DNA of 64,000 bases, from NCBI RefSeq assembly GCF_001194135.2, contig NC_068982.1:121110146-121174145 (forward strand), given 5' to 3'. The notes under the pieces were generated by a model. It was not told the DNA's origin and ran no database searches. It saw nothing but the letters and a program-made list of their open reading frames with translations. The position numbers and the translations under genes were made by a program. The DNA is from Octopus bimaculoides. Lineage: Eukaryota. Of the stretch, positions 1 to 63,770 are shown in pieces (the first letter of the stretch is position 1; each line of letters begins with the position of its first letter).

Positions 1-244
1 CCAGCAACCCTACAGAAACATTATTAAACAACATTACAACTATTTTAGACATTTATCACAAATTTCTAGCTCAACAAACCAATTTCTGGAATTTTTCTGA
101 CTCCTCCATTTTTTTTTTTTTTTCATTGAGTTTGATAAATTTTTATATATTTATTTTTACATGAACATTTTCAACTCAACATTAAACAATGAATTACTGT
201 CAGTTCACTAACTAGCCACTTAAAACTCTGCGTGTGTGTGCAAG

Positions 245-275
<31 letters not shown>

Positions 276-1209
276 GTGAGAGAGAGATACCTAGCAATGA
301 ATATTATGTCAACATAATCAAATATGAAATTATTCTGGATTGTAATATGTAAACAACAAGTAGACCAAACCATGACACTGTATCAACCAATAAGAGCTAT
401 ATAGTATTCTATATACACTAACCTTCTTCATCTTTGTCTCTAACACCCCCACACTATCAATATTTAAATGACACCAACCAATAAGACCTATATAATATTC
501 TACAGCAACTTTTTTTATAATGGTTTACTTTTGGCTTTTTACTTTAACGTGTGGCTCACATCGAAATATCAGACACGTCAAATCGTCCAACCCATGCTAG
601 CATGGAAAGCAGACGTTAAACAATGATGATGATGATAAGAATATGCCCTCATATCCATCACTGATAATGCTTATTGTAAGCAAACGTTAAACAAATTGTG
701 CTGCAAAACACTGTCTAAAAGTTATCAACAGCCCACAAATTCATGAAATTTGAAGATTTTTCTTTAGAAAAGTTCCTAGATTCACGAAGAGCACTTCAGA
801 GACCTACATATTTCTGACCATTACTGTACACAAAAATCCTCTACATTCTCTTCTATACAATAATTCTGCCACTAACAATATTTAAATAACATCAATTAAT
901 ACTAATGGTGTAATATTCTAAACACTGTAGCTCTTTTCTCAGTATTTAGATGACATTAACAAACATACAAACAGTTGTGGATGTTTTTGACCAGCAAACT
1001 TGAAAGATGTTTTATATATATTGCAGTTTTATAGAAGGTCATATTATATCAGATAAATTAGTATAGGATTGTGGGTATAATTTGTGAGGTAAAGTATTGG
1101 ATTGCTGGCACAATATGGGCGCAATACATTGTGAAATATGGGATTGTGGTAATGGTGAGGTGAAATTTTGGATCAAAGAATCCAGGGATTTGAGGACAAG
1201 TGCTTCAGA

Positions 1210-1500
1210 AGGCTGTTACACATGCTGTACACAGAGCACAAAACAAACAGCTTTATCAGGCAGTAAGCCACCAAATACACTGGCAGACTGGAATCACCCC
1301 TTGCACAGGTAAAAAGATGAAAGCTTACCTGGTATAGTCATGTTTCCCATTATAACTTCTTGTCCAAAACCATTCTTCAGAACACAGTTGAGGTTGGCAG
1401 ACAGAGAAAATCCTGGTTTGACAACATCAAGGACTGGACAGTGAACCTGCTACGCATAACAGAGATCAGTGGCGACAGTTAACTATGAAAGCCTCTAGAG
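1210..1500 (+). mobile_element. Decayed 3' fragment of an RTE-clade LINE
   Basis: GRQRKSWFDNIKDWT at 1396-1440 is a typical RTE C-terminus; the frame is broken. Confidence 0.65.
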
Positions 1501-1711
1501 TGGCATCTCTATGACTGGCTGCATCAGTTAAAGGATTTTGATGATGATGATGTTGTAGAGCAAAGTTTGTCTATATAGATGGGCCTGATATCTGGGGGGA
1601 AGTGTGAGCATATGAATGGACATGTGTTGATAGATACAACATCTGCAGTAAAGTAGGGGAGTTTGGGATTTTAAGAGGTATAAATAGCTTGTGATAGTGA
1701 TGTACAGTTAA

Positions 1712-1907
1712 CCATTTTGTCACCATGTTTCTGTTGAAATACTTTTCTTTATTTCAGTTAATTCTGAAAGTGAACTATATAAAATAACTTTGTCATTATT
1801 AAGCTAGTATTTAGAATAAAGTAACTGGAAATTTTAATTGAAGATTTAAATTTAGATTACTTTGAAACACTGCAGGGGCAGACTCAAGTGGGTTGGGATC
1901 AAAAGAG
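1712..1907. mobile_element. TTAA-flanked piggyBac-like MITE, degenerate copy
   Basis: TTAA at 1708-1711 and 1908-1911; internal similarity to 27797-28014. Confidence 0.6.
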
Positions 1908-1932
1908 TTAAGCAACAATAATAATAATAATG

Positions 1933-2144
1933 TTTTCTACTGGAAGCACAAGGCCTCAAATTTGTTGGGTGGGGACTAGTCGATTATATCAACCCCAGTG
2001 TTTCACTGGTACTTAATTTATCGACCCCGAAAAGATGAAAAGCAAGGTTGATCTCGGTGGAATTTGAACTCAGAATATAGCAACGAGCGAAATACTGTTA
2101 AGCATTTTATCCAGTGTGCTAATGATTCTGCTAGCTTGCCGCCT
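1933..2144 (-). mobile_element. tRNA-derived SINE, family A
   Basis: Reverse complement of the element at 2942-3156 and 50996-51212; (TAA)n tract follows. Confidence 0.85.
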
Positions 2145-2148
2145 TATT

Positions 2149-2195
<47 letters not shown>

Positions 2196-2636
2196 GAAGT
2201 AGAGTTGTTTCTAATATAGGCACAAATTTATCTCACCCTCCTTGGTGAAAACTAAGTTAACTCCATAGCTGTAACCACCCATTTCTCTGGATATATTCTC
2301 ACATCAACTGCAAGTCATATTTGTTTCTCTCACTCCAGTACTTTTGGTGTCCCCTCTACTTATTACTTTCTGTAGACAAACAGTAATAGGAGTAATGAAG
2401 TTCTGTCTTCTATAGTTGCAATAGATTTTATTTACACAGGTAAAGGGATCAGACTAATTCTATTTTGTATGTGGCTGTTGTAACATGCATTTGTTAGTAA
2501 TGAAAGATCAGGGTCCCAGTTTTGATGATTTAGTGATTACATATTTAATACATAGATGACCAAATAATCTAACTAGAAATGTATGTGGTGATACAGACAG
2601 GTAGTTAGGTTAGTGTTAATATATTTAACATGTGTA

Positions 2637-2850
2637 AGGCACCAAGCTGGCTGAATCGTAAGTAGACTGGGTAAAATGCATAGTGGCATTTTGTCCATCT
2701 TTATGTTGTGAGTTTAAATTCTGCTGAGGTCAACTTTATCCTTCATCCTTTCATGAGTCGATAAAATAAGTATCAGTTGAGTACTGGGGGTCAATGTAAT
2801 TGACTTACCCACTCCCCAGAAGCTGCTGGCCTTGTGCCAAAATTTGAAAC
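2637..2850 (+). mobile_element. tRNA-derived SINE, family A (older copy)
   Basis: gctggctgaatcg head; aggtcaactttatccttcatcc...gataaaataagtatcagttg core. Confidence 0.75.
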
Positions 2851-2941
2851 CAATATGTTTAATATGTGTAATATCATACAATCATTCTTGAAATATGTGA
2901 TAAGGAAAAATATATAAATAGCTAATATTATTTTCATTTAA

Positions 2942-3156
2942 GGCAACGAGCTGGCAGAAACATTAGCATGCTGGGCGAAATGCTTAGCGGTATTTCGTCT
3001 GTTTTTACATTCTGAATTCAAATTCTGCTGAGGTCGACTTTGCCTTTCATCCTTTCGGGGTCAATAAATTAAGTACCAGTTGCATACTAGGGTCAATCTA
3101 ATCGACTGACCCCACTCCCCCAAAATTTCGGGCCTTGTGCCTAGAGTAGAAAAGAA
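2942..3156 (+). mobile_element. tRNA-derived SINE, family A
   Basis: ggcaacgagctggcagaa head with A/B-box-like segments; central aggtcgactttgcctttcatcctttcggggtc...taagtaccagtt domain recurring across the window. Confidence 0.88.
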
Positions 3157-3845
3157 AAAATTATTTTCATTTTCCTGGCAAATGAGGAGATAATTTTAGA
3201 CATTGTTTTAGTCTTATTTGAACCTCTTTAGCTAAGTGTAGTCTTCCTGCACTTGCCAAATTAGTGATGAATAAAACATTGAGTAAATGTACAAAACTTT
3301 GTTTGTTGTTATAATGAAATACATTTGTTTCCTATGTTAACAATGTATAACTTGTATGGAAAGGCTGGGCGTAGCTAATTAGCTTAGATCAAGATTGAAT
3401 TATACAGTTGTTTATCATAATTACTGAAAGAAAGGAAATATTATCATTGATTGATTTTAACTATTTCTTGCCACTTTATTTATTTCTAATTATATATTTA
3501 ATGCTTTATCCATTAAATACGTCAACACTAACTTACCACTTGTTTTTCCACGTTGATGGCATCTCTAAATTATTTCAGTTTTGGTAGATTTTTGAAAATT
3601 ATATATGAAATGTTGATTGCAAAATGCTAATATATTGTATTATATATAATCAGTTTACACATGTATGTTTCTTATTTTTTTTTTGTTTCATTCACGAAGA
3701 AGAGACCATGCAAATAAATGTTTCCTTTGTTATGTTTTTTGTTTGTGTAAATATTATATATGTGTTATGTGAGTGTACATAAAATGTGTGTGTGGGTGCA
3801 TGTAAATCTGTCTTTATCACTTCTTTATAAACTATCTTTTTCTAG

Positions 3846-3908
3846 GAGTTTCTGCATGTGCGCCGAAATAATGCAGTGATGCTCCCTGGGAAATGTTCAC
3901 ACGGACTA
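3846..3908 (+). CDS. FNIP1/2: FNIP candidate exon, copy A (63 nt, phase 0-0): [21 protein letters not shown]
   Basis: tctttttctag acceptor and CTA|gtaagt donor; only frame 0 is open; phase matches the phase-0 exon at 14228; GKCSHG resembles the (A/G)KCCQ segment of vertebrate FNIP N-termini (recalled, not aligned). Confidence 0.7.
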
Positions 3909-6900
3909 GTAAGTGTATCCACTGTAGACACATGGGTCCTTTCTCACTCACCTATGTGCTTGGGCTTGGGCTTTTGTCTCTTCATGGACCCTCTCTCAAT
4001 CACCTTTGTGACTGGGTTTGGGCTTTTCTCTCTTCATTAACTAGTAGCTCATTTTCTGTCTTAAATTGTTGTTTGTGTTGTGTTGGTGTTATTATTTTTT
4101 TTTTTTGTTGTACTATGCTTTGGTGTTGGTATTGGCAGTAGTGGTGATGTTATTGGTGGTTGTTACCAATAGTGATGTTGATTGTGTTGGTGGTGTTGGT
4201 TTAATCAATAGGATTGGTGCGGTTGTTTCCCTTGTTATGTTTTTGTTTTGAGTAGATATCTGTGTGTTATGGGAGTACATAAAGTGTGTGTGTGTGTGTG
4301 TATGTGCATGTGTGCGTGTGCCTGTCTTTATCAGTGGTGCTGCTATTATCTTTTTCCAGGAAATTCTGCATGTGCACCAAAATAATGCAGTGACGCTTTC
4401 TGGGAAATGTTCACACGGACTAGTAAGCGTATCCACTGTAGACACATGGGTCCTTTCTCACCCACCTATGTGCTTGGATCAGTGGTGGTGGTGTGTTGGT
4501 ATCAGTAGGGTTGGTGGTGGTGTTGCCTTCAGTGGTGTCGGTGTTATTATTGTTGTCATTGATGTTTGTTGTGATGTAATTGTTATCTGTATTGAGAGTG
4601 GTGGTGGCAGTAGTTGTGTTATTGTTATCAGTGTTGTTATCATTAATAACAGTGTTGTCATTGATATCAGTGGTGGTGATGGTGGTGGTGGTATTACCAG
4701 TGTAATGGTACTATTTGTATCAATGGTGTTAGCCATGTTGTTTAGTGCCAAAATTTAGGACCAAAGGCTTTCATCTATGACTATCCCATGTTAAGGTTAT
4801 ACTACATGTTGGGTTACATTCTTCATCATGCCCTTTCTTTTTTTAACATGGATGGCTGCTATTTGTAGGAATTTTTGCTGCTGTTTATTAGTTGACCAAA
4901 TATCTATATAGAAGTTAGCTGGTGGTGGTAGTGGTGTTATCAACGATGCTGTTAGCTATGGTGTTACTGGTGGTGTGTCACCTTACTCATTCCTGATCAA
5001 GTTGTCTTGTGGCACTGAATAAATAGTGAGGCATGGCCCACATTTCTCTTCCCATTTCTACCATGTCACCGTCTAGCTAGCTAGGATGCAGCACCACATT
5101 CCGGACATATTTTCTCCATAGTCCTGCCTAATCTATTCTTGTACATCCCTAGATTTTAGTGGTTCCTCTAGTGGAGGGGGCAGTTAGAACACAACAGATG
5201 GTTACCAAGTGAAAAGAGGAGACAGAAATGCGGTGCAGATGGAATCATCATCTTGATTTAATATCAGTTATTCATGTTGATGCAGATTGGATGGTTTGAC
5301 ATGATCCAATCCACAAAGCTATGCTGGACATATTTTAGTTTTGGCATGATTTATATGACTGAATGTCATTCCTAATTCTAACCCCTTTACAATATATACT
5401 GAGTGCTTTGTTCATGTCACTGGCACTAGAGAGGTTGCCAAATATTTTGCAAGACAGTATAAAGAAAGGGAAAAGCAAAAGCCTCATTGACTGTGTGTGA
5501 GTGTATCTGAGAGAAGAAGCGGCTTTATGCCAAGTGTTGCTGGATAAAGTATGATGGAGGAACAAGCGAAGCTGTCTTATACTAGAGAAGATACAAGGCT
5601 ACCTTGTGTTATGTGAAGGTGGCTGGGAGCAGCTAGAAAGAAGACAGATGGTGGGGATGAGGTGCTAGAGCATACTCTCAAGGTACAAGAAGGTGAGTTT
5701 AAAGGAGACTGTAGACTGGATCAGGAGGGAAGGAAAGAGTGGGTAATTCCATAAGAGCATGGGAGGAGAGTGAGTGATGGTTAGAGATTGGGCTTGAGGT
5801 GAAAGTAGTGAGTGATGGTTAGAGATTGGGCTTGAGGTGAAAGTAGTGAGTGATGGTTAGAGATTGGGCTTGAGGTGAAAGTAGTGAGTGATGGTTAGAG
5901 ATTGGGCTTGAGGTGAAAGNNNNNNNNNNNNNNNNNNNNNNNNNNNNNNNNNNNNNNNNNNNNNNNNNNNNNNNNNNNNNNNNNNNNNNNNNNNNNNNNN
6001 NNNNNNNNNNNNNNNNNNNNNNNNNNNNNNNNNNNNNNNNNNNNNNNNNNNNNNNNNNNNNNNNNNNNNNNNNNNNNNNNNNNNNNNNNNNNNNNNNNNN
6101 NNNNNNNNNNNNNNNNNNNNNNNNNNNNNNNNNNNNNNNNNNNNNNNNNNNNNNNNNNNNNNNNNNNNNNNNNNNNNNNNNNNNNNNNNNNNNNNNNNNN
6201 NNNNNNNNNNNNNNNNNNNNNNNNNNNNNNNNNNNNNNNNNNNNNNNNNNNNNNNNNNNNNNNNNNNNNNNNNNNNNNNNNNNNNNNNNNNNNNNNNNNN
6301 NNNNNNNNNNNNNNNNNNNNNNGTGTTATTGTGATATGGGTGTGGTGTGACTTGTTTAATGCTAATACTGTTAATTACGCTGTATAAAAAATTACTAGTT
6401 TTATGGATTTTTTTTTTTTACATTTCCTTTTTCACTTGTGTAATTCTGATTATTGTACTTTTCTCTCTTTTTTTTTTTATGATAGCTATTTGTAGTATGT
6501 GTGTAGTTTTAAGGTTGTATTTCTTCCTATTGCATTTGTAAGATTTTTTTTTTAATTTTTTTTTTTTTTAGATGTGTGTATAATTATTTTGTTGAATGTA
6601 TGTACTGCACTGTCCATGCTGGTGATTTTTGATTCTGTTTCTTCGTGGAACTTGTTCCATAATTACTTTTTTTGACATTCATAAAAGTATTTTAGCTTTC
6701 TTCCTTATGTGCAAGTATGTTGTGATGATAATTGGTGTATAGTGTGAGAGAAAATGGGGAATTGTTTGCCAGTAGTTGTGATAGTTGGATGTGTGAAGCA
6801 GATGTGATGCCTGAGGAATAGTAGAGTTGTTAGTAGGCTTTGTATGTGTTGGTGTGGAGTATTCAAGAAACTGAATTTATCATCACCATCATTTAATGTC

Positions 6901-9900
6901 TGCCTTCCATGCTGGCATGGGTAGGGTGATTTGATGAATAACCAGTGAGCTATAGGGTTGTGATGAGCTCCAATGTCATCTTTACAGAGTGTACTGGGTG
7001 TTTTTCTTGTGCTACCAGCACTAATGAAGTTGCCCTGTAATTTCGAAGACAGAATTGAACAGAGGAGGAGGAGGAAAGGGAAGACAAAAGCTCTCACTAC
7101 TTTGAAAAAGTATTTGGGAGTGGGAGGTGGAGATGACTGGCTGTATACCAAGTGTCGAATGGCTGAAGTATGATAGAGGGACAAGTACATTTGTTTTGCT
7201 ATAAAGGAGATGAGAGGATAACAGTGATGGGTGCTAGAGCAAGCTCTCAAGGATCAGGAACGAGGTGAGCATAAGAGGGGATGAGGACAGTGGCTCATGG
7301 TAAGGGATGAGAGAATGGATGCTTTTATATGAGTGTAAGGAGGGAATAAACAGGTGGAAATAGAGGTTAGTGTAGTGAGTGAGGAACAAAGGTGGTGGTG
7401 CAGATGATGAGAAATACCAGTATGCAGAGAAGTGCAGTGGGTGACATAGGAGTGGCTCAGGAAGGAGAATAAACAGAAAGGAGTAGAAGGATGTGTAAGG
7501 TGTAGGATCTGTGAAGAGAGAGAGAGAGCGAGAGTGGAGGGGGGATACATAAGGGGTTAGGTGTTTAGAATAGAGTATCGGAGAGGGGAAATAGCACAGA
7601 AAGGAGGTTAATTGGTTGAAGACAGAAACGAGGTTGATTGGTTGAAAAGGTGTAAGTTGTGGTGATATAATCTATGTTCACTGAAAACCATGAGCTGAGT
7701 GCATTGAATCCTCTACCAGTGATGGTGTTTGTGAGACTATGGTTAAAATTTTCTAGCTTGGAATGGCTAATTTGTGGGATAGTTAATGAGAGTGATGGTG
7801 GGTGTATGCATATATTATTATATTAATGTGCTTCTGTGCTTCCTATTGCTAATTTTATTTTGAAAGCTTGCATATTTGTTTACAAATGTCATTTATGATA
7901 TCTGTATGTGTTGAATGCAATGTTTTATATCTGTTATAAGACCACTCCCATTGGGAAAAGGGTCTTTCAAATCTGATTTCAGTATAATTTGGAAAAGTGG
8001 GTGTTCAGTGTACTGATTGTAAGAATGGTTCCAGAATTATAGGTGTTTTTAAACAAGAAGCATTGTAAAAATTCAATATTTTGTATCATATTTCCAGAGT
8101 TTATTTTTCTGTGTGAAACGTTTATTTTCAGTATATTCTGTGCAGACTTACAACATAAGGAAAGGAAGTAATGGCACTTTCTGTTATATCATTATTGTTA
8201 CTGTCAGTGTTATTTGACCTGTAAAGTTATGTATTTTTTAAACACTCCACTTCACAAGATAAATAAGGCTTAAATGTTGTGTGAGTATTTTGAAGACATT
8301 GTAAGACATCATTGTTGGTGTCAGTGGTATTGACCATGTTGTTTAGTGCCAAGATTTAAGATCAAAAGCTTTATCTCTGACCATTCCATGTTAAGGTATA
8401 CTACATGTTGGAATACATGCTTTGTTCCAAGGGGTAGCCACTGTTGTTCTCTCACAGCATTTACATGCATAAGAACTATTTTCGTGTATCTATTCCACTT
8501 ATTTGACTTGCCTTCTTTTCTGAAATATATTCAGTATTGGTTTATTTTGTTTGTATCTTTATTGATAAATATTATAAAAAGAAAAGCAAAGAATTCACAA
8601 TTACACATCTTTAGCATCTAAGCCCAAACATTGGCAAGTTACAGTGCTAAAAATCGTTTGATGATACACATTGTCCATGTATGTTACGTGCTTTCAGTCA
8701 ATTAATCAATCATCATCATCATTTTTACAGTCACTTTTTCTATGTCTGCATGCATTGAACAAAATTTCTCGAGGCTTTATTCTACAGCTGGACACCCCTC
8801 TTGATGCCGACTGTTACTTGTTTTCAAGTGAGACACTTTATACCATGTCTTTGCATGTTGCATTGCTGGGGTACTGGACATTGTCCTTAAACAATGTTGC
8901 AATGATACCACTCCCTGAGTGGTATCGTTGAAGGGCATCCTACTGCAGAAACAAAGGCAAGACAAACTATAGAACCTGGTGTGGCTCCTGGCCTTGCCAG
9001 TTCCTCTCATGCTGTTCAACCCATGCCAGCATGGAAAATGGATGTTAAATGATGATGATGGTGATATATACAGTCAATCCCCATATAGTTTCCAGCTACC
9101 AAATTTCACTGATGAATCAGAAGTGAACCCATGGTTATAGTAGAAGACACATACCCAAGGTGCTCTGCTGTGGAATTGAAACTGAAACTAACCACATGCT
9201 TGTGAAGTAAAATTCTTAACTACACATCCTGCCAAAACAAGAAGTCTAATTACAAATAGAGAAATCAGAACCAGTGGGTACCATAGATTGTAGTATCAAG
9301 AGTCAAAGATTTTGTATACTGCATCTACATAGACTTTTGACCTCCTAGAAATAACAACCAAACTTCCTTCAAATTATATCTTGCTGTCTTAAATAAACTG
9401 GACATTAACTTTGTAGACAGGGCTGTCATGGCTGGAATGATTTTTATCCAGTGTCCATGGTGTATCTGTGACTGAAATCACAATATCCCTCCTAAACTGG
9501 ATGCCAGTCCATCACAGGGTCGGGTCACTCCGAGTGAACTGGCGCAGTGTGAAATGGAGTGCTTTGTTCTAAAACACAACATACCACTCAGTCTGAGAAT
9601 TGAAACCACGATCTTGCGATTGTAAGACCTTTAATCATAGTCCTGCTGAATCAGTGTTCACCTGGGACTAAACAACTGCTTAATTTCAAACTTCATCAAA
9701 GAATAAAATGCAAATATATTTGTGTGTACGTGCATGTTTGCATTCGTATGATGAATGAATATCTGTTTATGTAATTGTTTATAGACATACATTTAACTGT
9801 AGCCTTACTAAATTTCACTCCCACTCCTTCTTTTCTATTTCACTGCCCCACTTCTATTGTCTTTCTGAATTAGCTGTAATTTATTCATTGCACACTAATG

Positions 9901-12900
9901 ACTATAATAATGATAATTGCTGACTCTGGAGTGCTTTGTCCCATGTTTAAGAAATTATGAATGGGCTCATTGCCTATAAATTAGTGCTGATAATTATTTC
10001 TAACCTAAACTCAAGACCACTAATATAGAGAAGGAACAGTTGATCATTGATCACAGAATTGATATTCACATTGGAAGAAGTTGGATCCAGTAAGTAGGAC
10101 ATAACTAAATCATCATTATCATCAATTGATTAACATCTACTTTTCCATGCTAGCATGGATTGGATAGAATTAGTTGAAGCAGTCCGCCCCACACTCATGG
10201 TTGGATACCATCCCTGCTACCAACCCTCACCAGTTTCCAAGTAATGTAATATTTTGTGATAAGCAAGCAAGTTTTTCATTGAAGACTGGAAATGAACAAC
10301 ACTGCTTGCTTGTTTATAACCATTACATGATGTCAAGACAATGGTACATACATACAATCTCTGTCTACCTAGGGTATTCAGTTCACAGTCATAAGGTCAT
10401 GAGTTTGATTCCTGGTGGCATGTCGTGTCCTTGAGCAAGACACTTTATTTCATGTTGCTCCAGTCCAGTCAGCTGGCAAAAATGAGCAGTACTTGTATTT
10501 CTGTACCTTGTCGCATTCTGTGTCATGCTGAATCTGCGAGAACTACATTTAGGGTATGCATGTTTGTGAGGTGCTCAACCATTTGTACGTTAATTTCACT
10601 AGCAAGCTGTTCTGTTGATCGGATCAACTGGAACACTCATTGTCAGTGTGCATGTATGACAGAGTATAAGTGTCTTAAGAAAAGTTGGGCATAAGATGTA
10701 GTGTGTAGAAGAGATAGCTGTACTGGTATGATCATATGATGCATATGAACGAGGACAGATGTGTAAAGAAGTGTCTGTAACTGTGGAGGGAACCTGTGGA
10801 AGAGGTGGACCCAGGAAGACATGGGATGAGGTGTTGAAGCATGCTCTTCAAACATTGGGCCTAATGGAGGCAATGACTAGTGACTAAGACCTTTGGCGAT
10901 ATGCCGTGCTTGTGAAGTCCCATCATGCCAAATAAAATTGTAGTTGCAGCCGATGCTGGTGTCATGTAACTGGCACTTGTGCGAGTGACACATGAAAGGC
11001 ACCTCTTGAGCATTGGGCCTCATGGAGGCAATGATAAATAGCTGAGACCTTTGGCAATATGTTAATGCTTGAGTAGAAGACCCATCAAGCAAAGTGAAAT
11101 TGTAGTCATGGCAGATACTGGTGTTGTGCAACTGGCACCCGTGGCAGTGGCACATAAAAGTACCCATTGCACTCTTGGTGTGGTTGGCGTTAGGACGGGC
11201 ATCCAGCCATAGAAAACATGCCAAATCAGACTGGAGTCTGGTGTAGCCCCTCAGCTTACCAGTCCAGTCAAACCATCCAACCCATACCAGCATGGACATT
11301 GTTAAATGATGACCATGAAACAGAGTACCAGTTATATATATATATATATATATCTTTGCTATTATGTTAAACTGTCATATGTCCAAATTTAGCCAAAAGC
11401 ATTTTTTTTTTTTCAATATTTAATTTTGCTTGCAATAGCCAGTTCTTTTGGTCAAACTATTGTATCTCCAGCTGCTTCAGATGAAAATTGTCAAAGTGTA
11501 GTGCAATGGTTTAACATTTTTCAAAAGTGTAGTAAGTCCCACATACGACAATGCTAGCATGGAAGGCGGACGTTAAACGATGCATGGAGTTAGGATTTTT
11601 TGCACCTGACAAAGTATTATTGTTAAGCTGAAATTGTTACTAATGTAAAAAGAAATGGAATGGTGAAACTATTTTGTCGTTTTCTGAAAAAGCAATGTTT
11701 TGGACTTACGACACTTTTGCATAATAGCAACTATATATATATATATATATATATATACACGCACACTACACGAAACAAAAGTTGTGAGAAACTATAGGGC
11801 TTTTGTTATTCTCTTCTTCACTACCACATTTTCATTTTGATAACCATTTCGGAGCATTTTCTGACATTGCTATAGAATAATGTTTTTCCTGCCAATTGAG
11901 TTTTTACATTGTTTCTTTAAAACTCAAAGCATTATTTCTGTTTGGTACATCTACCTCTATAGACCATAGTTTTTTCTGTACCCATGTCTTTTATTTTGTC
12001 TTAGGTCGGCTATGGTCCAATAAAACACAAAAGTAATCCAGCCATGGCCTTTTTTTTTTTGTCTGGCTATAGCTTATCCTATATTTCCTTAGTTTGTATT
12101 ATTGTAGGATGTCTTAGCTGTTGTTTCTAAAAGTTTGAGCTTGTTGGCTCACATATTTCTTCATCTTTTTATAAATAACTATCTCATTTCTTCAAGTATT
12201 ATTCAAAAATAGTGGCTGAAAATCATTATAGTTTGTTGGTAAAAGAACTTTTGATAATTTGTAATTTGATACTGGTGCTTAGTGATAATTGTGTTTCATA
12301 GATGCTGTTTTACATTGTTAGGGGAATCAATCAAAAAAGAGTCAATGCATTTATCACTTAAAAACACTGACTTTACTTATCAACTAATTCCTATAAATCT
12401 GCTTGTCGATGTGACAAGGTATTTGTTGATTGTAGCTCATAAAGTTAGATGTATTTATCTGTAATATGTGTAAGATGTATAGCTTATACATACAACTTGG
12501 AAATAGATTTTTTGCCAGCCTGGCAAAAAATCTTTATTCAATTTAAATAGCTACTTTGTTTAGAACAGATGGAGATAACAATTGAATAATATTGTGAAGT
12601 GCGAGAGTTGTTAAGCTACTAAGATGAACCCTAGATGTACCATATCCATAATAGTACTCATGTGAATGCTATGTAGGAACTAACTAGACATTCAATTCTT
12701 TATTCATCTTTGTAACTTATAATCACTCCACTTACAATATTTTAGTTCTAACAAGCAACCACTAAATATTTCTGAAATTATTAAATACTCAGTGTTAGAT
12801 ATTACAGACTTAATCTATTTCTTTCTGTTTAGAAAATGTAGCTATTCTTGCATTATACTAATGTAGGCTTGGCTTAACTTTCCTGAACAACATTCTTCAA

Positions 12901-15261
12901 ATTCATTGTACCTACATATAGCTAAACTGCTATAACTGCTTTCTTACATTAAAGATCTCAGTCCCATTCCTAACTGCTAACATACAAATCTGATAAATTT
13001 CTTTGTAATTAAGTTCCATGTTATTATTCAATGTTCAATTATTCTTGTAATCTGTCCTCAGTTTTTCTCTTATATAAATTTCTTTAGTTTTTGATGAATA
13101 ACTTCAAATCCCAGGCTAACCTGTTTTGATTGTGAAAATGAAACATTCTTTAAAACTGGTGTGATTCTTCTCATTAGGTTTCTCAGTGGTTTACAAATAT
13201 TTGTTTCAGTTTGAGCGAAAGAGTAGGAGAGGGAAGTGGTTAAATGTTTTGTCTCTTTTCTCTGTCTGCCTTGTGTAATTTACAGAAAACACAAAAGACT
13301 TGAAAGAAAATTCATATCATTAACATGTCTATCTTGTTATAGTCTTCGTTTATTTATACACTAATTTTTAATTGTGATTTTGTTTGTTTTAGTTTTCCGT
13401 TTCATAATCAGAGAAGAGGAAACAAAACCAAATTTGGAAGTTTTAGTTAGTAATTCTGTTGATGTTTAGGATCAGCTCCATTGATGGCATGAATCCTACC
13501 CAATATTTATGAGCTATAAATCTTGGGAAGATTATCTGATAAGTCTATTGAGGGATTGCTTAGTAATTGTACCATTCACTGAGACATCTTTAACTAGAAT
13601 CAGCATAAGTTTCCATGTTTTTGTCCTTGATGATGCTCTCTTTTAGGTGATCTTTGATACAGAATTGTTAGACCTCTGCCAGTGGTGACAAAATCTTCAC
13701 CCAGCAAGTAGGATTGGCAAGAAATAACCTATAACATGATGTTATAGCCATTAAATTCTACTCTATCTGGAACACATATGTAATATGAATATAGTTTATA
13801 TAAACTCTTGTAAATATCATCATATTCCTCTGAGCCTTAAGGTTTAAACCTAGTTTCATTAGTTCATTTAAACTGATTCTTTCTCTTTCTTGTTATGAGT
13901 TGTTAGTATTTTATTTCAGCTTGAAGTCAACTGGACTGCTGGGTGTCATTGATCTTGGCATTGTCTGTTTATCTGTCTTAACTTTACTAAGGTTTACATT
14001 GAATTATTATTAATATGGCAGTTTCAGTTCTTTGTTGCCTCCTTACAATACTGTATGTGTGAGCGTGCACGTGCAATATATGTATGTAGATAAGTACATA
14101 ACATTACATATGTAGGTTTGAGTATGCACATGCACTATGTATTGTGAATCCTACACAGCCAATATCGACACCCTGCCCTCTTGCTTTCCTCACCTATTGT
14201 ATCACAATGTTTCTTCTCTCTTCACAGTATCCACGACCTGGCAGTGATGTTGAAATTCTGGAAGAGATGATATTTGGTTCTGTAGCAATGGCCTACAAGG
14301 GAGCCTCACTCAAAGTCCACATCCTTAGGTACATCTTCAAATCTTTAATTAATATATTCACTAATTGCTATAATTAGGATATTGTCCTTGATATCACCAA
14401 CTTCACTTATAACAATACTTTACTCTAAATGTAACATTTAAACTATTCAGTCTCAATAGTAAATCAGTGATCTTTATTATAATCACTATGAGTCCGCTAC
14501 CACCACATGCCATACCATCAACACCTGCTTCTATTGTAACTCCCATTATCACATATCCATACCACCGTCATCTATTCTAGCTTCAATTTCAATTTATCCT
14601 TCCATTAACCCTTCTTTATCTTCTCTCTTGTCTAATTTTGGACATCTTTATGAGAGTCACTTTTTAACTATTTCTTCTTCTTAAATTGATCTTCACACTT
14701 AAATTGTTCCATTACCATTTCCTAATTAAAGGCAGTAATTGTTGTACCACTGTTTATTGAAGTATTTTTCGATTTAGTGTGATATGTCCTTACTTCAACA
14801 TTAATTATGGGATTTATCTTTACAGATCTCCACATCAACTCATGTTAACCAAAGTTTTCTTACCTGAGCAAGAAAAGAAAGAAACTGGCAGGTATGTGTC
14901 AATAGCTAAACCATAGTGTGGAATTTTGTTGTTACAATGTCATCTTAGAAGAACAGCGGATAACAAATTTGGTAGAATGCTTGCTAAAACACTTTGTAGT
15001 GTGTTGTTATATGTTCCCCCATATTCCTGAACCCTTTCTGAGAAGTCTACTTTGTCCTTCAGCTTTTCAGGTCTACTAAATATTCAGGTATTGCCTGCCA
15101 TACCTCACCACCTTGTTTCATCGCACCATCATCATTTTAATATCCACTTTTCTATTCTGACTTGGTTTGATGGTTTTTATTGAGGCAGGTTTTCTATGGC
15201 TGGTGCTCTTCCTGCTGCCAATGCTTACCCGTTTCCATGCAACATGATAGTTATCTATCTA

Positions 15262-38036: not shown

Positions 38037-39595
38037 TACATACACACACACACACATACATACACACACACACACATACATATATGGATGTTGAATATCA
38101 GATGAGCTTATTTTGCATCAAGATAAGATTGTCATAAGAGCTAAGCAGTCATTTGAAGGAAAGTTTTGAAACTTTGCCATCTCTCCCTCCCTTCCTCCTG
38201 TTACCATTGTTTTCTTCATCCACCCTTCCCTCCTTTGCACCTCCTCTTCCTTCTCCTCCTCCTCCTCTTCTCTGTTATGCTGAAATGGTTGCTTGATCTG
38301 TACGTTGGACATGTTTCATCTGTTGACAAGCAGGAACATGTCACAACTCTTTAGACTTTCATTGAAAAATAAATTGGATTCTTGCATCATCATATAAACA
38401 TGTGATTGTGGCGTTCATCTGCTCTTTGTCTCTTATTTGTTGAGGTGTTGGTGGGAATTAGGGGTCGTTTTAACTGTTGTGATGTTGGCAAGCTTGAGGG
38501 TTTTACTGGGTTCATCATCATCCTTTAACGTCCGTTTTCCATGCTGGCATGTGTTGGATCATTTGACCAGAGCTGGGAAGCTGCACTAGGTTCCCATCTG
38601 ATTTGGCTTGGCTTTTATGGCTGGATGCCCTTCTTATAGGGAGAATTGTTTGGATGAACTGAACAACAATATCAGACAGAAATATACCACCAACAAAAGA
38701 TGTGGCACCCTATATGATCACTGAAAAATTTCTAGAAAGTAGCAGCCAAATTTTGCTCAGGTCACACTAACACTTAAAAAAAGGATGGACACATTGGATA
38801 ATGTAATCTGTAATACTGTATGTCTAAATAAAAGACAAGATGGTCACAGCTGGAATTTTTTAGATCATAGATCTGCTGTTGTAGATTTGATTTGTGGTTA
38901 AACAATGATCAATAATAATAATTCCACTAATGCAGAGCTGTTAGAAATAGCAGTGCAATCTCCCTCAGCTACACTTTATCATCATTTTATAAAGAGAAAC
39001 CTTGACTGATACGGTCATAAATATATGCAAAAGAGGATGGTCACAGCTGGGATGTCATGGATTATAGGTCTGTTGGATCAGGGTTCATGTGGGGTTTACA
39101 AATACAGCATCAAAATATATTTGTTGAGATAAGAAAGATAAGAAAGAACTGAAAAATTGATTCTTGTAGAGGGAATGGTGTTAGTGATGGAAACGAGAAT
39201 AATAGGAGGAGGAGTTATGTACAAATATTTTAATCAGATGAGGAAGGTGATGAATATGATTTTTGCAGCCTAACCTTTTTCAAATCAGTGTGTACAGAGA
39301 TGGAATGCTTGCAACAGAATGAATTTCATTAAAGACAGCATCGATGGCAGTGCTAAAAACTAAGCGCTGTCTATTATTATTATCTGAGCTGATCACAAAA
39401 CAAAACAAAAGCAGGTTTGGCTGTGTTATTTGATCTCTTTAGCCTTGATTTTTCAACAGGTTATTCAGTTTGACCTCAAATTTCTCACCTTGATAGTTTT
39501 TGCCATGTTGTTGTCCAGAAGATACAACTAAACATAGGAATATAATGAGATATGTCAAGTTTTTATGGAGATTTCCAGAGATAGTTTTAACTTGA

Positions 39596-40872: not shown

Positions 40873-43290
40873 TTAGTATAAAAAACGTTTATTCAAACTG
40901 TAAATAACACACAAAAGTGTGTTATTTCTTATAAGGGGAGTTCCCTTCCAGAAATACTTCTGGTAACTGTCTTTTGAGGGTTTCTTCCCTTCTCTGTCTC
41001 TTTGGCTCAGGTAAATCTTTCTCTGGGGTTTCCTTTTTTCTTTCAGTAAAAACCTGTCCAATGTTAGTTGTTTTTTGCCTGCATTGTAAAATTTTTCTAA
41101 AATGAGACATGACATTATCATTGAAAAGGTTTACTGCTCTATTTGCTACCTCTGTATCAGGATGATCTTTTTCCACAAAACTTTGCACATCACCCCATTT
41201 AGCACAAATTTCTTTGATTAAAGAATTTGGGACATCCTCTTTCTCAGCCAAAGTCTTTTGCTATTCATTTTGAAGGTATACGAGCTCTTCGGTGGTAAGT
41301 TCAGTATGGTGGTCTTCCACCAGCTCTTCAATATTTTCACTGTCAACATCCAAGCCCATAGTTTTTTTCCCATAGAGACAATATCATCAACAATAGCAAT
41401 TTCCTTGACAGCAGCTGTACTTGTAGCTGTCTCAAATCCTTCAAAGTCTTGTTCTGGTACACAGTATGGCCAAAGTTTCCTCCATACTGAATTCATGGTT
41501 CTGTAACTCATTTGTTCCATGTATTATGAATAAGATTAACACAATTCAGGATATTGAAATGATTTTTCCAAAATTCTCTGAGAATTAACTGAGTGTCATT
41601 AATGACTTAAAACACTTTCGAAACAAGGCTTTTGTGTAAAGTTTCTTAAAGTTTGCAATGACCTGTTGATCCATTGGTTGTATTAGAGAAGTTGTGATAG
41701 GTGGCAGGTATTTTACCTGAATAAAATCAAACTCTTCAACTAAGTCATCCTCCAAACCTGGAGGGTGAAATGGAACATTGTCTAACATGAGAAAGTATTT
41801 TAGTGGCAAGATTTTCTTGCAGATATTTTTTAACACTCGGGGCAAAAACTTCATGAATCCACTCAATGAAAAATTGTCTGGTTACCCAAACCTTTGTATT
41901 AGCCCTCCGCATAACAGGCAATTTACTCTTCATAACATTGTTTCTTTTGAAAACCCTCGGATTATCGGAATGGTAAATAAGCAATGACTTGACCTTGAAA
42001 TCGCCACTTGTATTGCCGCATAGCAAAAGAGTGAATCTATCTTTCATTGGCTTGTGCCCTGGCAATGCTTTTTCCTCCTTAGTAATTATAGGTTGTATTT
42101 GGCATTCGTTTACAAAATAATCCTGTTCCATCCCTGTTAAACACCCGTTGGGGGAGATAACCTCCTTTCTTTATCAAGTCACTAAACTCAATCACAAATT
42201 TCTCAGCCTTTTCCTTGTTTGAACTTGCCGCCTCTCCATGCCTAATTACACTGTGTTATTTCACTTCTCTGTGGAGGCACAATGGCCCAGTGGTTAGGAC
42301 AGCGGACTCGCGGTTTCGATTCCCAGATCGGGCGTTGTGAGTGTTTATTGAGCGAAAGCACCTAAAGCTCCACGAGGCTACGGCAGGGAATGGTGGCGAA
42401 CCCTGCTGTACTCTTCCACCACAACTTTCTCTCACTCTTACTTCCTGTTTCTGTTGTGCCTGTAATTCAAAGGGTCAGTCTTGTCACACTGTGTCACGCT
42501 GAATATCCCCTGAGAACTATGTTAAGGGTACACGTGTCAGTGGAGTGCTCAGCCACTTGCACGTTAATTTCACGAGCAGGCTGTTCCGTTGATCGGATCA
42601 ACTGGAACCCTCGACGTCGTAAGCGACGGAGTGCCAACAAATTTCACTTCTCTTCTTTAAATTTCTCGAACCATCCTCTACTAGCTATCAATTTAAAAGT
42701 AATACTTTCAGCACTTGTACCAGGGGTTTTCTTTACTAGATCATTATAAATTTCTAATGCTTTCTCACAAATAAATGCTTTACTGATACTGTCACCTGCT
42801 ATTTCTCATTTATAAAAATAGGCAATGACTTATCTACTTCTTCGAGTATCTCTGGTCTTTGTTTATTACAGCAGCTTTTATCATTTCCTTATTTTTTAGA
42901 ATAGTAGATATTGTCGATTTTAAGTATATCGTACCGCACAGCGAAACTGACACACGAACACCATTTTCGTTTTTGCGACAATTTCTTTCTTCACTTCAAT
43001 TGTTTTTCTCTCAATTTTTCTTTTTCCTTTACCAGTATGACTGCTAGCTTTCTTTGGAGCCATGACTAAGGGTTAATGAAGAGGGGGAAAAAACCACAGT
43101 ACAATAAAGTTGGAAAAGAAAAGCACCACACAACACACGAATGTATACAAAACGGCGGTCGATTCAGAGCTGATTCCGTTTGAGTTAACTGAGTTCGGCA
43201 ATGTTGTTCGATAACCGAGGCATTTTCATCTCGAATTTTCTATTCGAAAACCGATTTGTGTGACATTCGAGAACCGAGATCGTTATGTAT
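40873..43290 (-). mobile_element. Tigger/pogo DNA transposon with decayed transposase (CENP-B-type HTH plus DDE_1)
   Basis: Minus-strand fragments KPMKDRFTLLLCGNTSGDFK, MLDNVPFHP, LPPITTSLIQPMDQQVIANFKKLY; several stops and frameshifts; degenerate terminal ctcggttctcgaa repeats near 43210-43290; boundaries approximate. Confidence 0.9.
42271..42640 (+). mobile_element. Full-length tRNA-derived SINE (family D) with 13-bp TSD, nested in the Tigger
   Basis: TSD atttcacttctct at 42258-42270 and 42641-42653; tRNA-like head ggcacaatggcccagtggttagg...ggtttcgattccc; degenerate relative at about 10360-10640. Confidence 0.9.
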
Positions 43291-45392: not shown

Positions 45393-46680
45393 TCAGGTCA
45401 TCCCATAAGTTCTGTCCGAATTTTGAATAAAGAAAGCAAGTGATCAAATGTTATATTTAATTGAAATTTAATCATCAATGTACTTTCCCTGATTACCTAT
45501 GACTTCCTTCCATCTATTTACAAGCTTTTTAATCCCATCAATGTAAAATTCTTTTGGTTTCAAAGCGAAGAACTCTGAAATGTCAGTTTCAACCTCCTCC
45601 TGGTTTGCGAAAGTTTTGTCTCCCAAATGATTCTGTAAACTACGAAACAGATGGTAGTCTGAAGGAGCAAGGTCGGGAGAATAAGGTGGATAAGGAATTT
45701 TTTCCTAACCACGCTCTTCGATCTTTGGTTGTGATGTGATCTTTGCAGTGTGGGGTCGCGCATTGTCCTGATGAAACATCACTCCTTTTCGATTCACTAA
45801 AGCGGGTCTTTTTTTCTTCAAAGCTTGGTTCAAACGCTCTAATTACTGACAGTAGACTTGAACATTAATTGTTGCGTTAGGTGGTAACAATTCAAAATGA
45901 ATTACTCCTTTGCAATCCCACCAGCTAGAGAGAACCTTTTTCCCATGAAGTTCCCTTCTCGGTTGTGATTGAACCTTTCCCCCTTTTACCAAGCGACTGT
46001 TTACGACGTTTAACATTTCGATAGAAGATCCATTTTTCGTCACCAGTCAAAAGTGTATCCAAAAAGAGTGAAATGAGTTCGTGAGAATGGCAGGAAGAGC
46101 AGATGTCAATTCGGGATTTGCGGTTGCTTTCGGACAATTCATGAGGCACCTATTTCTAAGTTAAGGAACCTTTCCAAGTTGTTGAAGATGACGATGAACA
46201 GTTGTATAGTTTGAACTAAGCTTTATTGCCAATTCGTCAACTGATATGGCAGGATTTTCTTCAAGTAATGCCTCACGGAGCTTATCATCAAACTCAACTG
46301 GGCGTTCTGTTCGATCTTCATCTTTAAGGCTGAAATCTCCACTTCTGAATTTTGTAAACCATCTTCTGCAAATTCTTTCATTCAAGCATTCTTCCCATAA
46401 ACTGAGTGTATGTTTCGAGTCGCTTCGGATGCAAAGTTTCCTTTTTTGTATTCATAAAGCATTATGTGCCTCAAATGCTCTTTGGATACTTCCAAGTTAG
46501 AAATGGTTTTAATCAAAGAAATTTTAATTCTATTATTCTGTAAAATAATATTTAATTAGTTTAAATGTACATAAGTGCATAAAAATAATTTTAAATTTCA
46601 TTAGACATTCTGAAATACTATTAAATTTCATTCAATTTAAAAAAAAAGTAAAATCGGACAGAACTTATGGAATGATCTGA
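45393..46680 (-). mobile_element. Full-length (1288 bp) mariner transposon with TA TSD
   Basis: TIRs TCAGGTCATCCCATAAGTTCTGTCCGA (left) and TCAGATCATTCCATAAGTTCTGTCCGA (right, reverse complement); TA at 45391-45392 and 46681-46682. Confidence 0.93.
45468..46495 (-). pseudogene. Mariner DD34D transposase pseudogene
   Basis: RRWFTKFRSGDFSLKD (HTH), PHELS, TGDEKWIFY, WWDCKGVIHFELL; start codon mutated to TTG; several frameshifts and stops. Confidence 0.9.
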
Positions 46681-47338: not shown

Positions 47339-47369
47339 ATATAGACAACAACAACACAACATCTATAAA

Positions 47370-47781
47370 ATGACGTTCGTAACATCGTCTTTCTATTTAG
47401 GAATTTTAACAGGGACAATAATTTACCTGTATTTAATAAAGCAGGTAAAAAATAAACAGAAAACAAGGAAGAAATCACTTGGCAGTAAAGTGTTATTTTT
47501 CCCTGATAAGCAAATTGCCTGTAAATCACATTTTGTTGACGAGTCAGGTTGTACAAGCTTCCCGTGTCATTATTCGCATTCGCCTACAAGTCTGAGTTTT
47601 CTCTTCCAGTTGTTATGTTCAGCTCGTAAGTCAATTGATATATGTGTCTACATCATCTCGTGCCACGATTTGGTCGACATTCTCATCAAACTCAATGCAA
47701 TGGGAGTCGCTATTAGACTCATTACTGATGACGAGTATGAAGATGTAAATAACTCGTGGATTTGGAAACTTCGTAGTCAAG
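47370..47781 (+). CDS. PLD6: PLD6 exon 1 (membrane anchor, zinc wing, first half of PLD fold)
   Basis: ATG at 47370; 412 nt; donor gtaagt at 47782. Confidence 0.93.
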
Positions 47782-63590: not shown

Positions 63591-63770
63591 CTTTTTTTTT
63601 TTTTGCGTGTGTGTGCTTTTCCTCTTTAAATTTTTTTCATTACATAATTCTCAGTTTTGATGACGCCGGTTTTCTTCGCATGTTTCAACAATGAGTTTGA
63701 TGACGCCGGCCGTCATTATTATTATTATTGTTCAGTAGTTTTATTTTTATAACGTGCTTTNNNNNNNNNN

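What the first reader, a model, noticed from the sequence alone, without database searches (positions are those of the whole stretch)
3725..4477. Tandemly duplicated, frame-preserving 63-nt FNIP exon: candidate mutually exclusive exon pair
Seen: a unit of about 240 bp is duplicated (about 3725-3963 and 4230-4477). Each copy holds a 63-nt phase 0-0 exon with a pyrimidine-tract AG and a GTAAG donor, coding [21 protein letters not shown] versus [21 protein letters not shown]. The exons differ at 7/63 nt (5 non-synonymous, 2 synonymous), while the 55 nt after the donors differ at only 2 positions, so the intron flank is better conserved than the exon. Three differences are A (copy B) versus G (copy A): GAA/GAG, CAC/CGC (H/R), CAA/CGA (Q/R). 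Knowledge (recalled): vertebrate FNIP1/2 have a single K-C-C-Q segment just before the YxRPxSD/GSVAM exon in the N-terminal longin region. Inference: a lineage-specific exon duplication giving either/or or double-inclusion isoforms (the 451-nt spacer does not force exclusivity). The conserved downstream flank may be a splicing selector. The A/G changes could be CpG decay or could mimic A-to-I recoding.
Basis: partly seen in the sequence, partly recalled or inferred. Interest (0 to 1): 0.8.

Follow-up and report, generated by a model that had tools for sequence, protein, structure and literature searches.

The report
Duplicated small FNIP exon in octopus
An old, well-conserved 63-base coding exon of the octopus FNIP gene has been copied once in tandem; the first copy is the real conserved exon, and the second is a younger, fast-drifting copy with no sign so far of being a working alternative.

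Summary
The sequence observation is correct. Two homologous units (3719-3963 and 4223-4477) each carry a 63-nt, phase 0-0, exon-like open frame with a Py-tract-AG acceptor and a GTAAG donor. They lie on the coding strand of the Octopus bimaculoides FNIP gene, about 10 kb upstream of the "GSVAM" exon.

Comparison with Argonauta hians changes the interpretation.
- **Copy A is ancestral.** The argonaut has one copy in the orthologous intron. Its peptide is 21/21 identical to copy A, with only 2 synonymous differences. Splice sites are conserved, and so are unusually long intron flanks (62 nt upstream, 177 nt downstream).
- **The argonaut protein model skips this exon.** A homologous in-frame exon exists in scallop (KCYHGL) and is skipped in one snake FNIP2 isoform. 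Copy A is therefore a genuine exon, probably of cassette type.
- **Copy B is the derived copy.** All 7 exon differences, and the change at donor position +6, are on B's side. They are 5 non-synonymous and 2 synonymous, which is the neutral ratio. B's branch-point region is rewritten, it lacks most of the conserved downstream flank, and its donor is weaker and more tightly paired.
- **Other claims.** No docking site was found. "Flank better conserved than exon" is not significant (p=0.17).

A mutually exclusive pair is neither shown nor excluded, because no RNA data were available. This is an ordinary tandem exon duplication of moderate to low interest.

The parts
3719..4222 (+). First duplication unit: upstream flank, exon A, conserved downstream flank and GT-rich minisatellite
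   Evidence: blastn and MAFFT homology 3719-3963 vs 4223-4477; GT-rich repeat families D1/D2 follow both units
3784..3845 (+). Upstream intron flank of exon A (branch-point region and Py tract), conserved in Argonauta hians
   Evidence: 52/62 nt identical to L005 42363-42426. The TTTATAAACTAT...TTTTTCTAG stretch is shared by A and the argonaut but replaced in B
3846..3908 (+). Exon A: ancestral 63-nt, phase 0-0 FNIP coding exon ([21 protein letters not shown])
   Evidence: 21/21 aa and 61/63 nt identical to L005 42427-42489; both differences are synonymous; AG and GTAAGT conserved
3909..4085 (+). Downstream intron flank of exon A, conserved across octopods; contains two predicted hairpin arms and the perfectly conserved CCTATGTGCTTGGGCTTGGGCTTTTGTC
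   Evidence: 133/169 aligned nt identical to the argonaut. The blastn HSP overhangs the exon by 177 nt, against 40 nt or less for the other FNIP exons
3872..3926 (+). Predicted hairpin 1: 3' half of exon A paired with its 5' splice site and intron +1..+18
   Evidence: RNAalifold consensus of A, B and the argonaut, columns 27-81. Energy is -14.7 kcal/mol in A and -19.8 in B. Single-sequence z-scores are weak
3929..3958 (+). Predicted hairpin 2 in the intron (CACAUGGGU/ACCUAUGUG, 12-nt loop)
   Evidence: Nine pairs kept in all three sequences, with two one-sided pair-keeping changes; differences concentrate in the loop
3931..4034 (+). Old 52-nt tandem repeat within exon A's downstream flank
   Evidence: the repeat finder D4, 83% identity; both repeats are also present in the argonaut
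4223..4359 (+). Upstream flank of copy B, strongly diverged, with TG-microsatellite expansion and a rewritten -13..-30 region
   Evidence: 30/124 mismatches plus 15 gap columns vs A; only 37/62 identical to the argonaut
4360..4422 (+). Exon-like copy B ([21 protein letters not shown]): derived duplicate
   Evidence: All 7 differences from A are B-specific relative to the argonaut, 5 non-synonymous and 2 synonymous; open frame, AG and GT are intact
4423..4477 (+). Downstream flank of B (donor GTAAGC); homology with A ends at 4477, before the conserved GGGCTTGGGC block
   Evidence: 2/55 differences vs A; only the +6 T>C change is B-derived. GU of the donor has unpaired probability 0.07/0.11, against 0.60/0.52 in A
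4478..4726 (+). GT-rich minisatellite after copy B
   Evidence: the repeat finder families D1, D2 and D5
14228..14328 (+). Next FNIP exon ([33 protein letters not shown]), with a phase-0 acceptor
   Evidence: Matches FNIP2 PDB 6ulg residues 127-159, E=9e-8; Pfam FNIP_N 45 bits; cag|TAT acceptor; 96/101 nt identical to the argonaut

Best explanation
**What it is.** Exon A (3846-3908) is an ancient, functional, frame-preserving coding exon of octopod FNIP. It adds 21 residues (…GKCSHGL) between the 'LLFDS' exon and the 'YPRPGSD…GSVAM' exon of the N-terminal longin region. This is the counterpart of the K-C-C-Q segment of vertebrate FNIP1/2 and of the KCYHGL exon of scallop.

**How exon A probably behaves.** Its intron flanks are conserved far beyond what other FNIP exons show. 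Gene models and isoforms without the homologous segment exist in argonaut, pearl oyster and snake. It is therefore most likely a regulated cassette exon. This is inferred, at about 60%. The alternative is a constitutive exon that the argonaut annotation missed.

**How copy B arose.** In the O. bimaculoides lineage a ~505-bp segment was duplicated in tandem inside a minisatellite-rich intron. The segment held the exon, about 125 nt of upstream intron, 55 nt of downstream intron and a GT-rich minisatellite. Unequal exchange or replication slippage is the likely cause.

**What copy B is now.** Since the duplication, B has taken all the exon changes, in the neutral non-synonymous to synonymous ratio. 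It lost the ancestral branch-point region, it lacks most of the conserved downstream enhancer-like flank, and it has a weaker and more strongly base-paired donor. B is therefore most likely a silent or rarely used pseudo-exon, not an equal partner in a mutually exclusive pair. The near-identity of B's 3' third and flank to A is best explained by gene conversion from A, or by residual RNA-level constraint (inferred).
For: **Shown**
- The window is O. bimaculoides, and FNIP lies on the + strand.
- A. hians has one orthologous unit, L005 42363-42658. Its exon is 21/21 aa and 61/63 nt identical to A, with conserved AG and GTAAGT. It is the only exon-like candidate in that 13-kb intron.
- The upstream exon in A. 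hians ends in phase 0. The GSVAM exon starts in phase 0.
- The annotated argonaut protein GAB1598979.1 joins …MEENNE directly to YPRPGSD.
- The conserved flanks overhang exon A by 62 and 177 nt. The other FNIP exons overhang by 40 nt or less.
- In the 131-nt core, 9 changes are B-derived, 1 is A-derived and 10 are shared by A and B (Tajima p=0.011). In the exon the split is 7 to 0.
- pN/pS between the copies is 0.82.
- B's upstream 62 nt are only 60% identical to the argonaut, against 84% for A.
- Donor accessibility is lower in B. Hairpin energy is -14.7 kcal/mol in A and -19.8 in B.
- Pecten has a separate 102-nt phase 0-0 exon starting with PKCYHGL.
- Two snake FNIP2 isoforms differ by exactly the 41-aa CCQ segment.
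Against: - No transcript data were reachable, so neither inclusion of A nor silence of B is shown.
- B still has an intact frame, AG and GT. Simulation gives a 23-55% chance of this under neutrality, so it is uninformative.
- B-derived changes are very unevenly spread: 8 in 53 nt against 1 in 78 nt (p=0.003).
- Three B-derived changes all convert wobble or mismatch pairs into Watson-Crick pairs in the exon/5'ss hairpin. This could mean B is under some selection, not simply decaying.
- Polarisation rests on a three-taxon comparison. An older duplication with loss in the argonaut is disfavoured only by a rate argument.
- Pfam and an arthropod/vertebrate profile do not detect the A/B peptide.
Confidence: 0.62

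Rival explanations
1. A and B are a working alternative pair, either mutually exclusive or either/both. They would give FNIP isoforms differing at 5 residues (F2I, R6H, R7Q, M12T, P14S). B's stronger 5'ss hairpin or the shared downstream flank would act as the regulatory switch.
For: - Both have equal length and phase, intact splice signals and an open frame.
- B's 3' third plus flank is almost unchanged, 1/78.
- Three B-derived substitutions strengthen one helix over the donor.
- Tandemly duplicated exons are often spliced in a mutually exclusive way, and their flanking introns tend to be similar (PMC6071210; PMC9013439).
Against: - The non-synonymous to synonymous ratio in B is the neutral expectation, and A has no change.
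- B lost the conserved branch-point region and most of the conserved downstream flank.
- No docking site beyond shuffled controls in 1-14300.
- The 451-nt spacer and a length divisible by 3 give no steric or reading-frame enforcement of exclusivity.
- No expression data.
Confidence: 0.13
2. Exon A is constitutive in octopods and the argonaut model simply missed a small exon. B is an unused pseudo-exon. There is no alternative splicing at this site.
For: - Exon A is conserved at the same level as the neighbouring constitutive exon: 61/63 against 96/101 nt.
- Small exons are commonly missed by annotation. The argonaut entry is a GenBank, not RefSeq, model.
- All three Pecten RefSeq isoforms contain the homologous exon.
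Against: - Long conserved intron flanks are typical of regulated exons.
- Skipping is in-frame.
- One snake FNIP2 isoform lacks exactly the homologous exon.
- The Pinctada model also lacks it.
Confidence: 0.22
3. The tandem copy is an assembly artefact, for example two haplotypes or a mis-joined repeat in a short-read scaffold.
For: The window comes from a gapped short-read-based assembly with six N runs. The region is rich in minisatellites.
Against: - No gap lies between or next to the copies; the nearest is at 5920.
- The copies differ by 8% in the core and 24% plus indels upstream, far above allelic divergence.
- B has its own flanking sequence.
Confidence: 0.03

Closest known systems
Tandem exon duplication / mutually exclusive exon clusters (Letunic 2002 concept; Ivanov & Pervouchine, PMC6071210 and PMC9013439)
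   Same: Two adjacent homologous exons of identical length and phase, duplicated together with part of the adjacent intron. The downstream intron stretch is similar between the copies.
   Different: - Only one copy (A) shows purifying selection.
- No docking/selector complementarity was found.
- Exclusivity is not enforced by frame or spacing.
- No transcript evidence.
The exon carrying the K-C-C-Q segment of vertebrate FNIP1/FNIP2 and the 'PKCYHGL…' exon of Pecten maximus FNIP2-like (XP_033750947.1)
   Same: - Same position in the gene, directly upstream of the YxRPxSD/GSVAM exon.
- In-frame in octopus, scallop (phase 0-0 read at the DNA level) and snake (an exact 41-aa difference between isoforms).
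- Shared K-C-[CSY]-[QH]-[GL] motif.
- Skipped in frame in a snake FNIP2 isoform.
   Different: - Exon length and boundaries differ: 63 nt ending in HGL in octopods, 102 nt starting with PKCYHGL in scallop, 123 nt in snake.
- Sequence similarity outside the motif is not detectable by profile methods.
Conserved alternative cassette exons with conserved flanking introns and a 5' splice-site hairpin (MAPT exon 10 type; recalled from general knowledge)
   Same: A short exon with length divisible by 3, intron flanks conserved over long evolutionary distance, and a predicted stem that includes the donor site.
   Different: - Alternative use of exon A is inferred from annotations only.
- The hairpin has weak thermodynamic support (z = -0.1 to -2.2) and no compensatory changes.

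Membership tests
Mutually exclusive exon pair from tandem duplication | Adjacent homologous exons of equal length and phase with their own splice sites | tested here: met
   Both are 63 nt, phase 0-0, with an AG acceptor and a GTAAG donor
Mutually exclusive exon pair from tandem duplication | Both copies kept by purifying selection at the protein level | tested here: not met
   A has 0 non-synonymous changes vs the argonaut. B has 5 non-synonymous and 2 synonymous changes, the neutral ratio; pN/pS is 0.82; relative-rate test p=0.011
Mutually exclusive exon pair from tandem duplication | A mechanism enforcing exclusivity (steric, frame/NMD, or competing docking/selector structures) | tested here: not met
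   The spacer is 451 nt and exon length is divisible by 3. Best duplex with the flank in 1-14300 is -43/-46 kcal/mol; shuffles give -39.3±3.0 with a minimum of -47.7. The intron upstream of position 1 was not searched
Mutually exclusive exon pair from tandem duplication | Transcripts contain exactly one of the two exons | not testable with these tools
   No cephalopod transcript covering this region was found in the protein or contig collections
FNIP coding exon (N-terminal region, Pfam FNIP_N PF14636) | Lies in the FNIP gene on the coding strand, between the LLFDS exon and the GSVAM exon, with compatible phases | tested here: met
   The argonaut locus has exon 2 ending at 34335 in phase 0, the unit at 42427-42489 and the GSVAM exon at 47460. 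The window's GSVAM acceptor is phase 0
FNIP coding exon (N-terminal region, Pfam FNIP_N PF14636) | Peptide conserved between species under purifying selection | tested here: met
   21/21 aa identical, with 2 synonymous nt differences, between O. bimaculoides copy A and A. hians
FNIP coding exon (N-terminal region, Pfam FNIP_N PF14636) | Detectable sequence homology to FNIP proteins of other phyla | tested here: inconclusive
   Motif match: GKCSHGL vs Pecten PKCYHGL, human GKCCQL/AKCCQG and whale shark GKCHH. Pfam gains only +1.2/+3.2 bits. A custom profile gives no gain over shuffles. Smith-Waterman against human gives p=0.065 (A) and 0.01 (B)
Conserved alternative cassette exon | Frame-preserving length and intron flanks conserved well beyond those of constitutive exons | tested here: met
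   The exon is 63 nt. HSP overhang is 62 and 177 nt, against 40 nt or less for 13 other FNIP exons
Conserved alternative cassette exon | Isoforms with and without the exon observed | tested here: inconclusive
   The argonaut model lacks it. The homologous exon is present or absent between snake FNIP2 isoforms. No octopus transcript was seen either way
ADAR recoding substrate (exon paired with intronic complementary sequence) | Stable exon-intron duplex around the candidate adenosines, and A-to-G mismatches in RNA | tested here: not met
   B's A16 and A19 lie outside the conserved exon/5'ss stem, which covers exon positions 27-63 and intron +1..+18. In the consensus fold A16 gives U-A in place of U·G in a short 5' stem, and A19 leaves a C-A non-pair there. 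They are G-to-A changes at CpG sites in B. RNA mismatches are not testable here

The most novel reading that the evidence does not exclude
Copy B is a newly recruited, regulated alternative to exon A. On this reading, three B-specific substitutions were selected to lock its donor in a hairpin, so that B is used only when the hairpin is opened (for example in one tissue or state). This would give O. bimaculoides a lineage-specific FNIP isoform with R6H/R7Q/M12T/P14S changes in the longin-domain linker. A-to-I editing of B's CAC/CAA codons could restore the ancestral arginines.
Probability: 0.08. Interest if true: 0.55.

Novelty: new member of a known kind. Interest (0 to 1): 0.3.

Why it matters
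FNIP partners with folliculin to control Rag GTPases, mTORC1 and TFEB signalling. The exon lies in the longin region that forms that complex.

The practical results are small but concrete.
- A 63-nt exon with perfect amino-acid conservation between Octopus and Argonauta is absent from the deposited argonaut FNIP model. That model should be checked or corrected.
- The exon immediately before the GSVAM exon looks like a recurrently skippable, in-frame module across animals (snake, scallop, oyster, octopods). This is testable with public RNA-seq.

The tandem copy is an example of an early stage after exon duplication. One copy stays frozen and the other drifts. It is not yet evidence for a new splicing switch.

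Tried and rejected
1. **Upstream FNIP exons in 1-3845.** Nothing found with Pfam on three-frame translations. An 'IRLILF' match at 2451 and an 'AKCC' match at 5520 are chance, with no usable splice sites.
2. **Cephalopod FNIP in the 5.8-billion-protein index.** The first search returned only long-exon ORF fragments.
   - One fragment led to L001, another cephalopod-like genome (ENA ERZ21867824). It covers only 10 kb upstream of the long exon, and its introns do not align.
   - Walking along that contig failed.
3. **Exact look-ups of window ORFs over copy B.** Not on record.
4. **JGI metagenome scan with a degenerate GKCSHGL+GTRAG pattern.** Three chance hits.
5. **Profile tests of the A/B peptide.** Pfam FNIP_N and a custom arthropod/vertebrate HMM gave no gain over shuffled peptides.
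6. **Docking-site scan for the 55-nt flank.** Not better than shuffles.
7. **Rfam on 3000-5500.** No match.
8. **An early idea I dropped.** I first thought the T/C differences at exon position 34 and intron +6 were CpG decay in A. The argonaut shows they are T-to-C gains in B.
9. **Reaching FNIP annotation through the neighbouring PLD6 gene.** The ±10 kb loci in O. bimaculoides and O. sinensis do not reach FNIP.
Full report
**Observation.** The sequence is as described.
- Exon-like copy A is 3846-3908 (…ttctag|GAG…CTA|GTAAGT). Copy B is 4360-4422 (…ttccag|GAA…CTA|GTAAGC).
- They translate to [21 protein letters not shown] and [21 protein letters not shown]. They differ at 7/63 nt (5 non-synonymous, 2 synonymous). 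The first 55 intron bases differ at 2 positions.
- The repeat finder reports 3833-3963 vs 4347-4477 at 92% identity and 514-nt spacing.
- blastn and MAFFT extend the homology to 3719-3963 vs 4223-4477. No further copy exists in the window.
- Each unit is followed by a GT-rich minisatellite, so the duplicated segment was probably about 505 bp.
- The exon-like signals are not chance. With a YAG acceptor behind at least 10/14 pyrimidines, a 45-150-nt phase 0-0 open frame and a GTAAG donor, A and B are the only hits on either strand of the 64-kb window.
- Divergence between the units is 24% upstream, 11% in the exon and 3.6% in the downstream flank. The upstream-versus-rest contrast is significant (permutation p=0.003).

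**Context.**
- The window is Octopus bimaculoides. The two-exon PLD6/Zucchini-like gene at 47369-50813 encodes exactly XP_014777164.1.
- FNIP lies on the + strand. The 'YPRPGSD…GSVAM' exon is at 14228-14328 and starts in phase 0. Later exons run to about 36.1 kb.
- The first FNIP exons are upstream of the window.

**Cross-species evidence (decisive).**
- A full HMMER scan with the A+GSVAM peptide found GAB1598979.1, 'folliculin-interacting protein 1-like isoform X2' of Argonauta hians. Its genomic locus was retrieved as L005.
- The argonaut protein reads …LLFDSKAFPQMEENNE|YPRPGSD…, so the model contains neither A nor B.
- In the 13-kb intron between those two exons there is one orthologue of the unit, L005 42363-42658.
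- Its exon (42427-42489) translates to [21 protein letters not shown], which is 21/21 identical to copy A.
- Only two nucleotides differ and both are synonymous (CGA/CGC and CAT/CAC).
- The acceptor (tttttttctag|) and the donor (|gtaagtgtat) are conserved.
- It is the only exon-like candidate in that intron, and no second copy exists there.
- The upstream exon ends in phase 0 (GAG|gtatgg), so inclusion is in frame.
- Conservation around exon A extends 62 nt upstream (84% identical) and 177 nt downstream (79% identical). For 13 other FNIP exons the alignments overhang by at most 40 nt.
- A 28-nt stretch, CCTATGTGCTTGGGCTTGGGCTTTTGTC, is identical in both species.

**Which copy changed.**
- In the gap-free 131-nt core, 10 sites are shared by A and B against the argonaut. 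Nine are B-specific and one is A-specific (relative-rate test p=0.011).
- In the exon the split is 7 to 0.
- B's changes are 5 non-synonymous and 2 synonymous, with pN/pS 0.82. This is what 47.5 non-synonymous and 15.5 synonymous sites predict without selection.
- B's upstream 62 nt are only 60% identical to the argonaut, against 84% for A. The TTTATAAAC region is replaced by GTGGTGCTGCTAT.
- B's donor is GTAAGC instead of GTAAGT.
- B's homology with A stops at 4477, just before the conserved G-triplet block.
- Caveat: three sequences cannot root the tree. An old duplication with loss in the argonaut would require a tenfold rate difference between orthologous A copies (1 against 10 changes), so a duplication or conversion after the split is favoured.
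- B-derived changes are unevenly placed: 8 in 53 nt against 1 in 78 nt (p=0.003). I read this as gene conversion from A over 3886-3963, or as RNA-level constraint. This is inference.
- The retained frame and splice dinucleotides of B are expected in 23-55% of neutral simulations, so they carry no weight.

**Is the peptide FNIP?**
- Profile methods do not see it. Pfam gains +1.2 and +3.2 bits. A custom profile gives no gain over shuffles. Smith-Waterman against the human segment gives p=0.065 for A and 0.01 for B.
- Gene structure and motif do support it. Pecten maximus FNIP2-like (three RefSeq isoforms) has …KRNVEPQ|PKCYHGLRKF…KFH|FTKPGSD….
- In Pecten the middle part is a separate 102-nt phase 0-0 exon, directly before the GSVAM exon.
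- Human FNIP1 and FNIP2 carry GKCCQL and AKCCQG there (PDB sequences). A whale shark protein has GKCHH.
- Two Pseudonaja FNIP2 isoforms differ by exactly the 41-aa CCQ-containing segment. The Pinctada model lacks the segment.
- The exon before the GSVAM exon therefore looks like an in-frame, skippable module in several phyla.

**RNA-level ideas.**
- No sequence in 1-14300 pairs with the shared flank better than shuffled controls do.
- There is no Rfam match in 3000-5500.
- A three-sequence consensus fold gives a hairpin joining the 3' half of the exon to its donor (3872-3926). It gives a second 9-bp hairpin in the intron (3929-3958).
- All six substitutions in paired columns keep pairing, but none is compensatory. 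Single-sequence z-scores are weak, from -0.1 to -2.2.
- Three B-specific changes (exon positions 34 and 38, and intron +6) turn U·G, C×A and G·U into Watson-Crick pairs. Hairpin energy goes from -14.7 to -19.8 kcal/mol. The unpaired probability of the donor GU falls from about 0.55 to about 0.1. This is suggestive, but it was noticed after the fact.
- The A/G differences are G-to-A in B. Two are at CpG sites, and they lie outside the conserved exon/5'ss stem, so editing mimicry is not needed.

**Conclusion.** Exon A is a genuine, ancient FNIP exon and probably a cassette exon. Copy B is a young O. bimaculoides-lineage duplicate that evolves without detectable protein-level constraint and has poorer splicing context. 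A mutually exclusive pair is possible but unsupported. This is a new example of a well-known process, tandem exon duplication (PMC6071210 and PMC9013439).

Noticed in passing
window 47369-47781 and 50538-50813 (+): A two-exon PLD6/Zucchini-like gene (PLDc_2, HKD motif). Its spliced product is exactly XP_014777164.1 'mitochondrial cardiolipin hydrolase-like' of Octopus bimaculoides, which identifies the window's species and chromosome (CM046602.1).
   Followed up: yes
L005 42427-42489 (Argonauta hians BAAFZT010000005.1): The deposited A. hians FNIP model (GAB1598979.1) omits a perfectly conserved 63-nt in-frame exon. This is either an annotation gap or a skipped isoform.
   Followed up: partly
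proteins P0246 vs P0239 (Pseudonaja textilis FNIP2, UniRef A0A670Y4K2 / A0A670YEH0): The two isoforms differ by exactly a 41-aa in-frame segment containing the CCQ motif, directly before YARPASD. The homologous vertebrate exon therefore appears skippable.
   Followed up: partly
window 41222-42170 (-), 45471-46451 (-), 63187-63579 (-) and 63688-63999 (-): Transposon remnants: a pogo-like DDE_1 endonuclease, a mariner/Mos1-like HTH with a C-terminal fragment, and two near-identical zf-RVT (reverse-transcriptase zinc-binding) ORFs on either side of a 10-N gap. The last pair may be a local assembly duplication.
   Followed up: partly
L001 (ENA ERZ21867824, ctg121125l, 272 kb): A 'metagenome' assembly in ENA holds large contigs of another cephalopod-like genome with an FNIP gene. 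Exons are 68-84% identical to the window and introns do not align. A 43-aa ORF there belongs to a repeat family with 93 protein clusters on contigs up to 558 kb.
   Followed up: partly
window 38094-38393 vs L005 65870-66153; window 9866-10016 vs L005 44600-44758: Non-coding stretches conserved between Octopus and Argonauta. One is downstream of the FNIP stop (78% over about 300 nt, probably 3'UTR). The other is inside the intron between copy B and the GSVAM exon (69% over about 150 nt).
   Followed up: no
window 5511-5580 (+): An open frame reading [16 protein letters not shown] scores higher against the human AKCCQ segment than A or B do. It has no usable acceptor and is out of phase, so it is a chance match.
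   Followed up: yes
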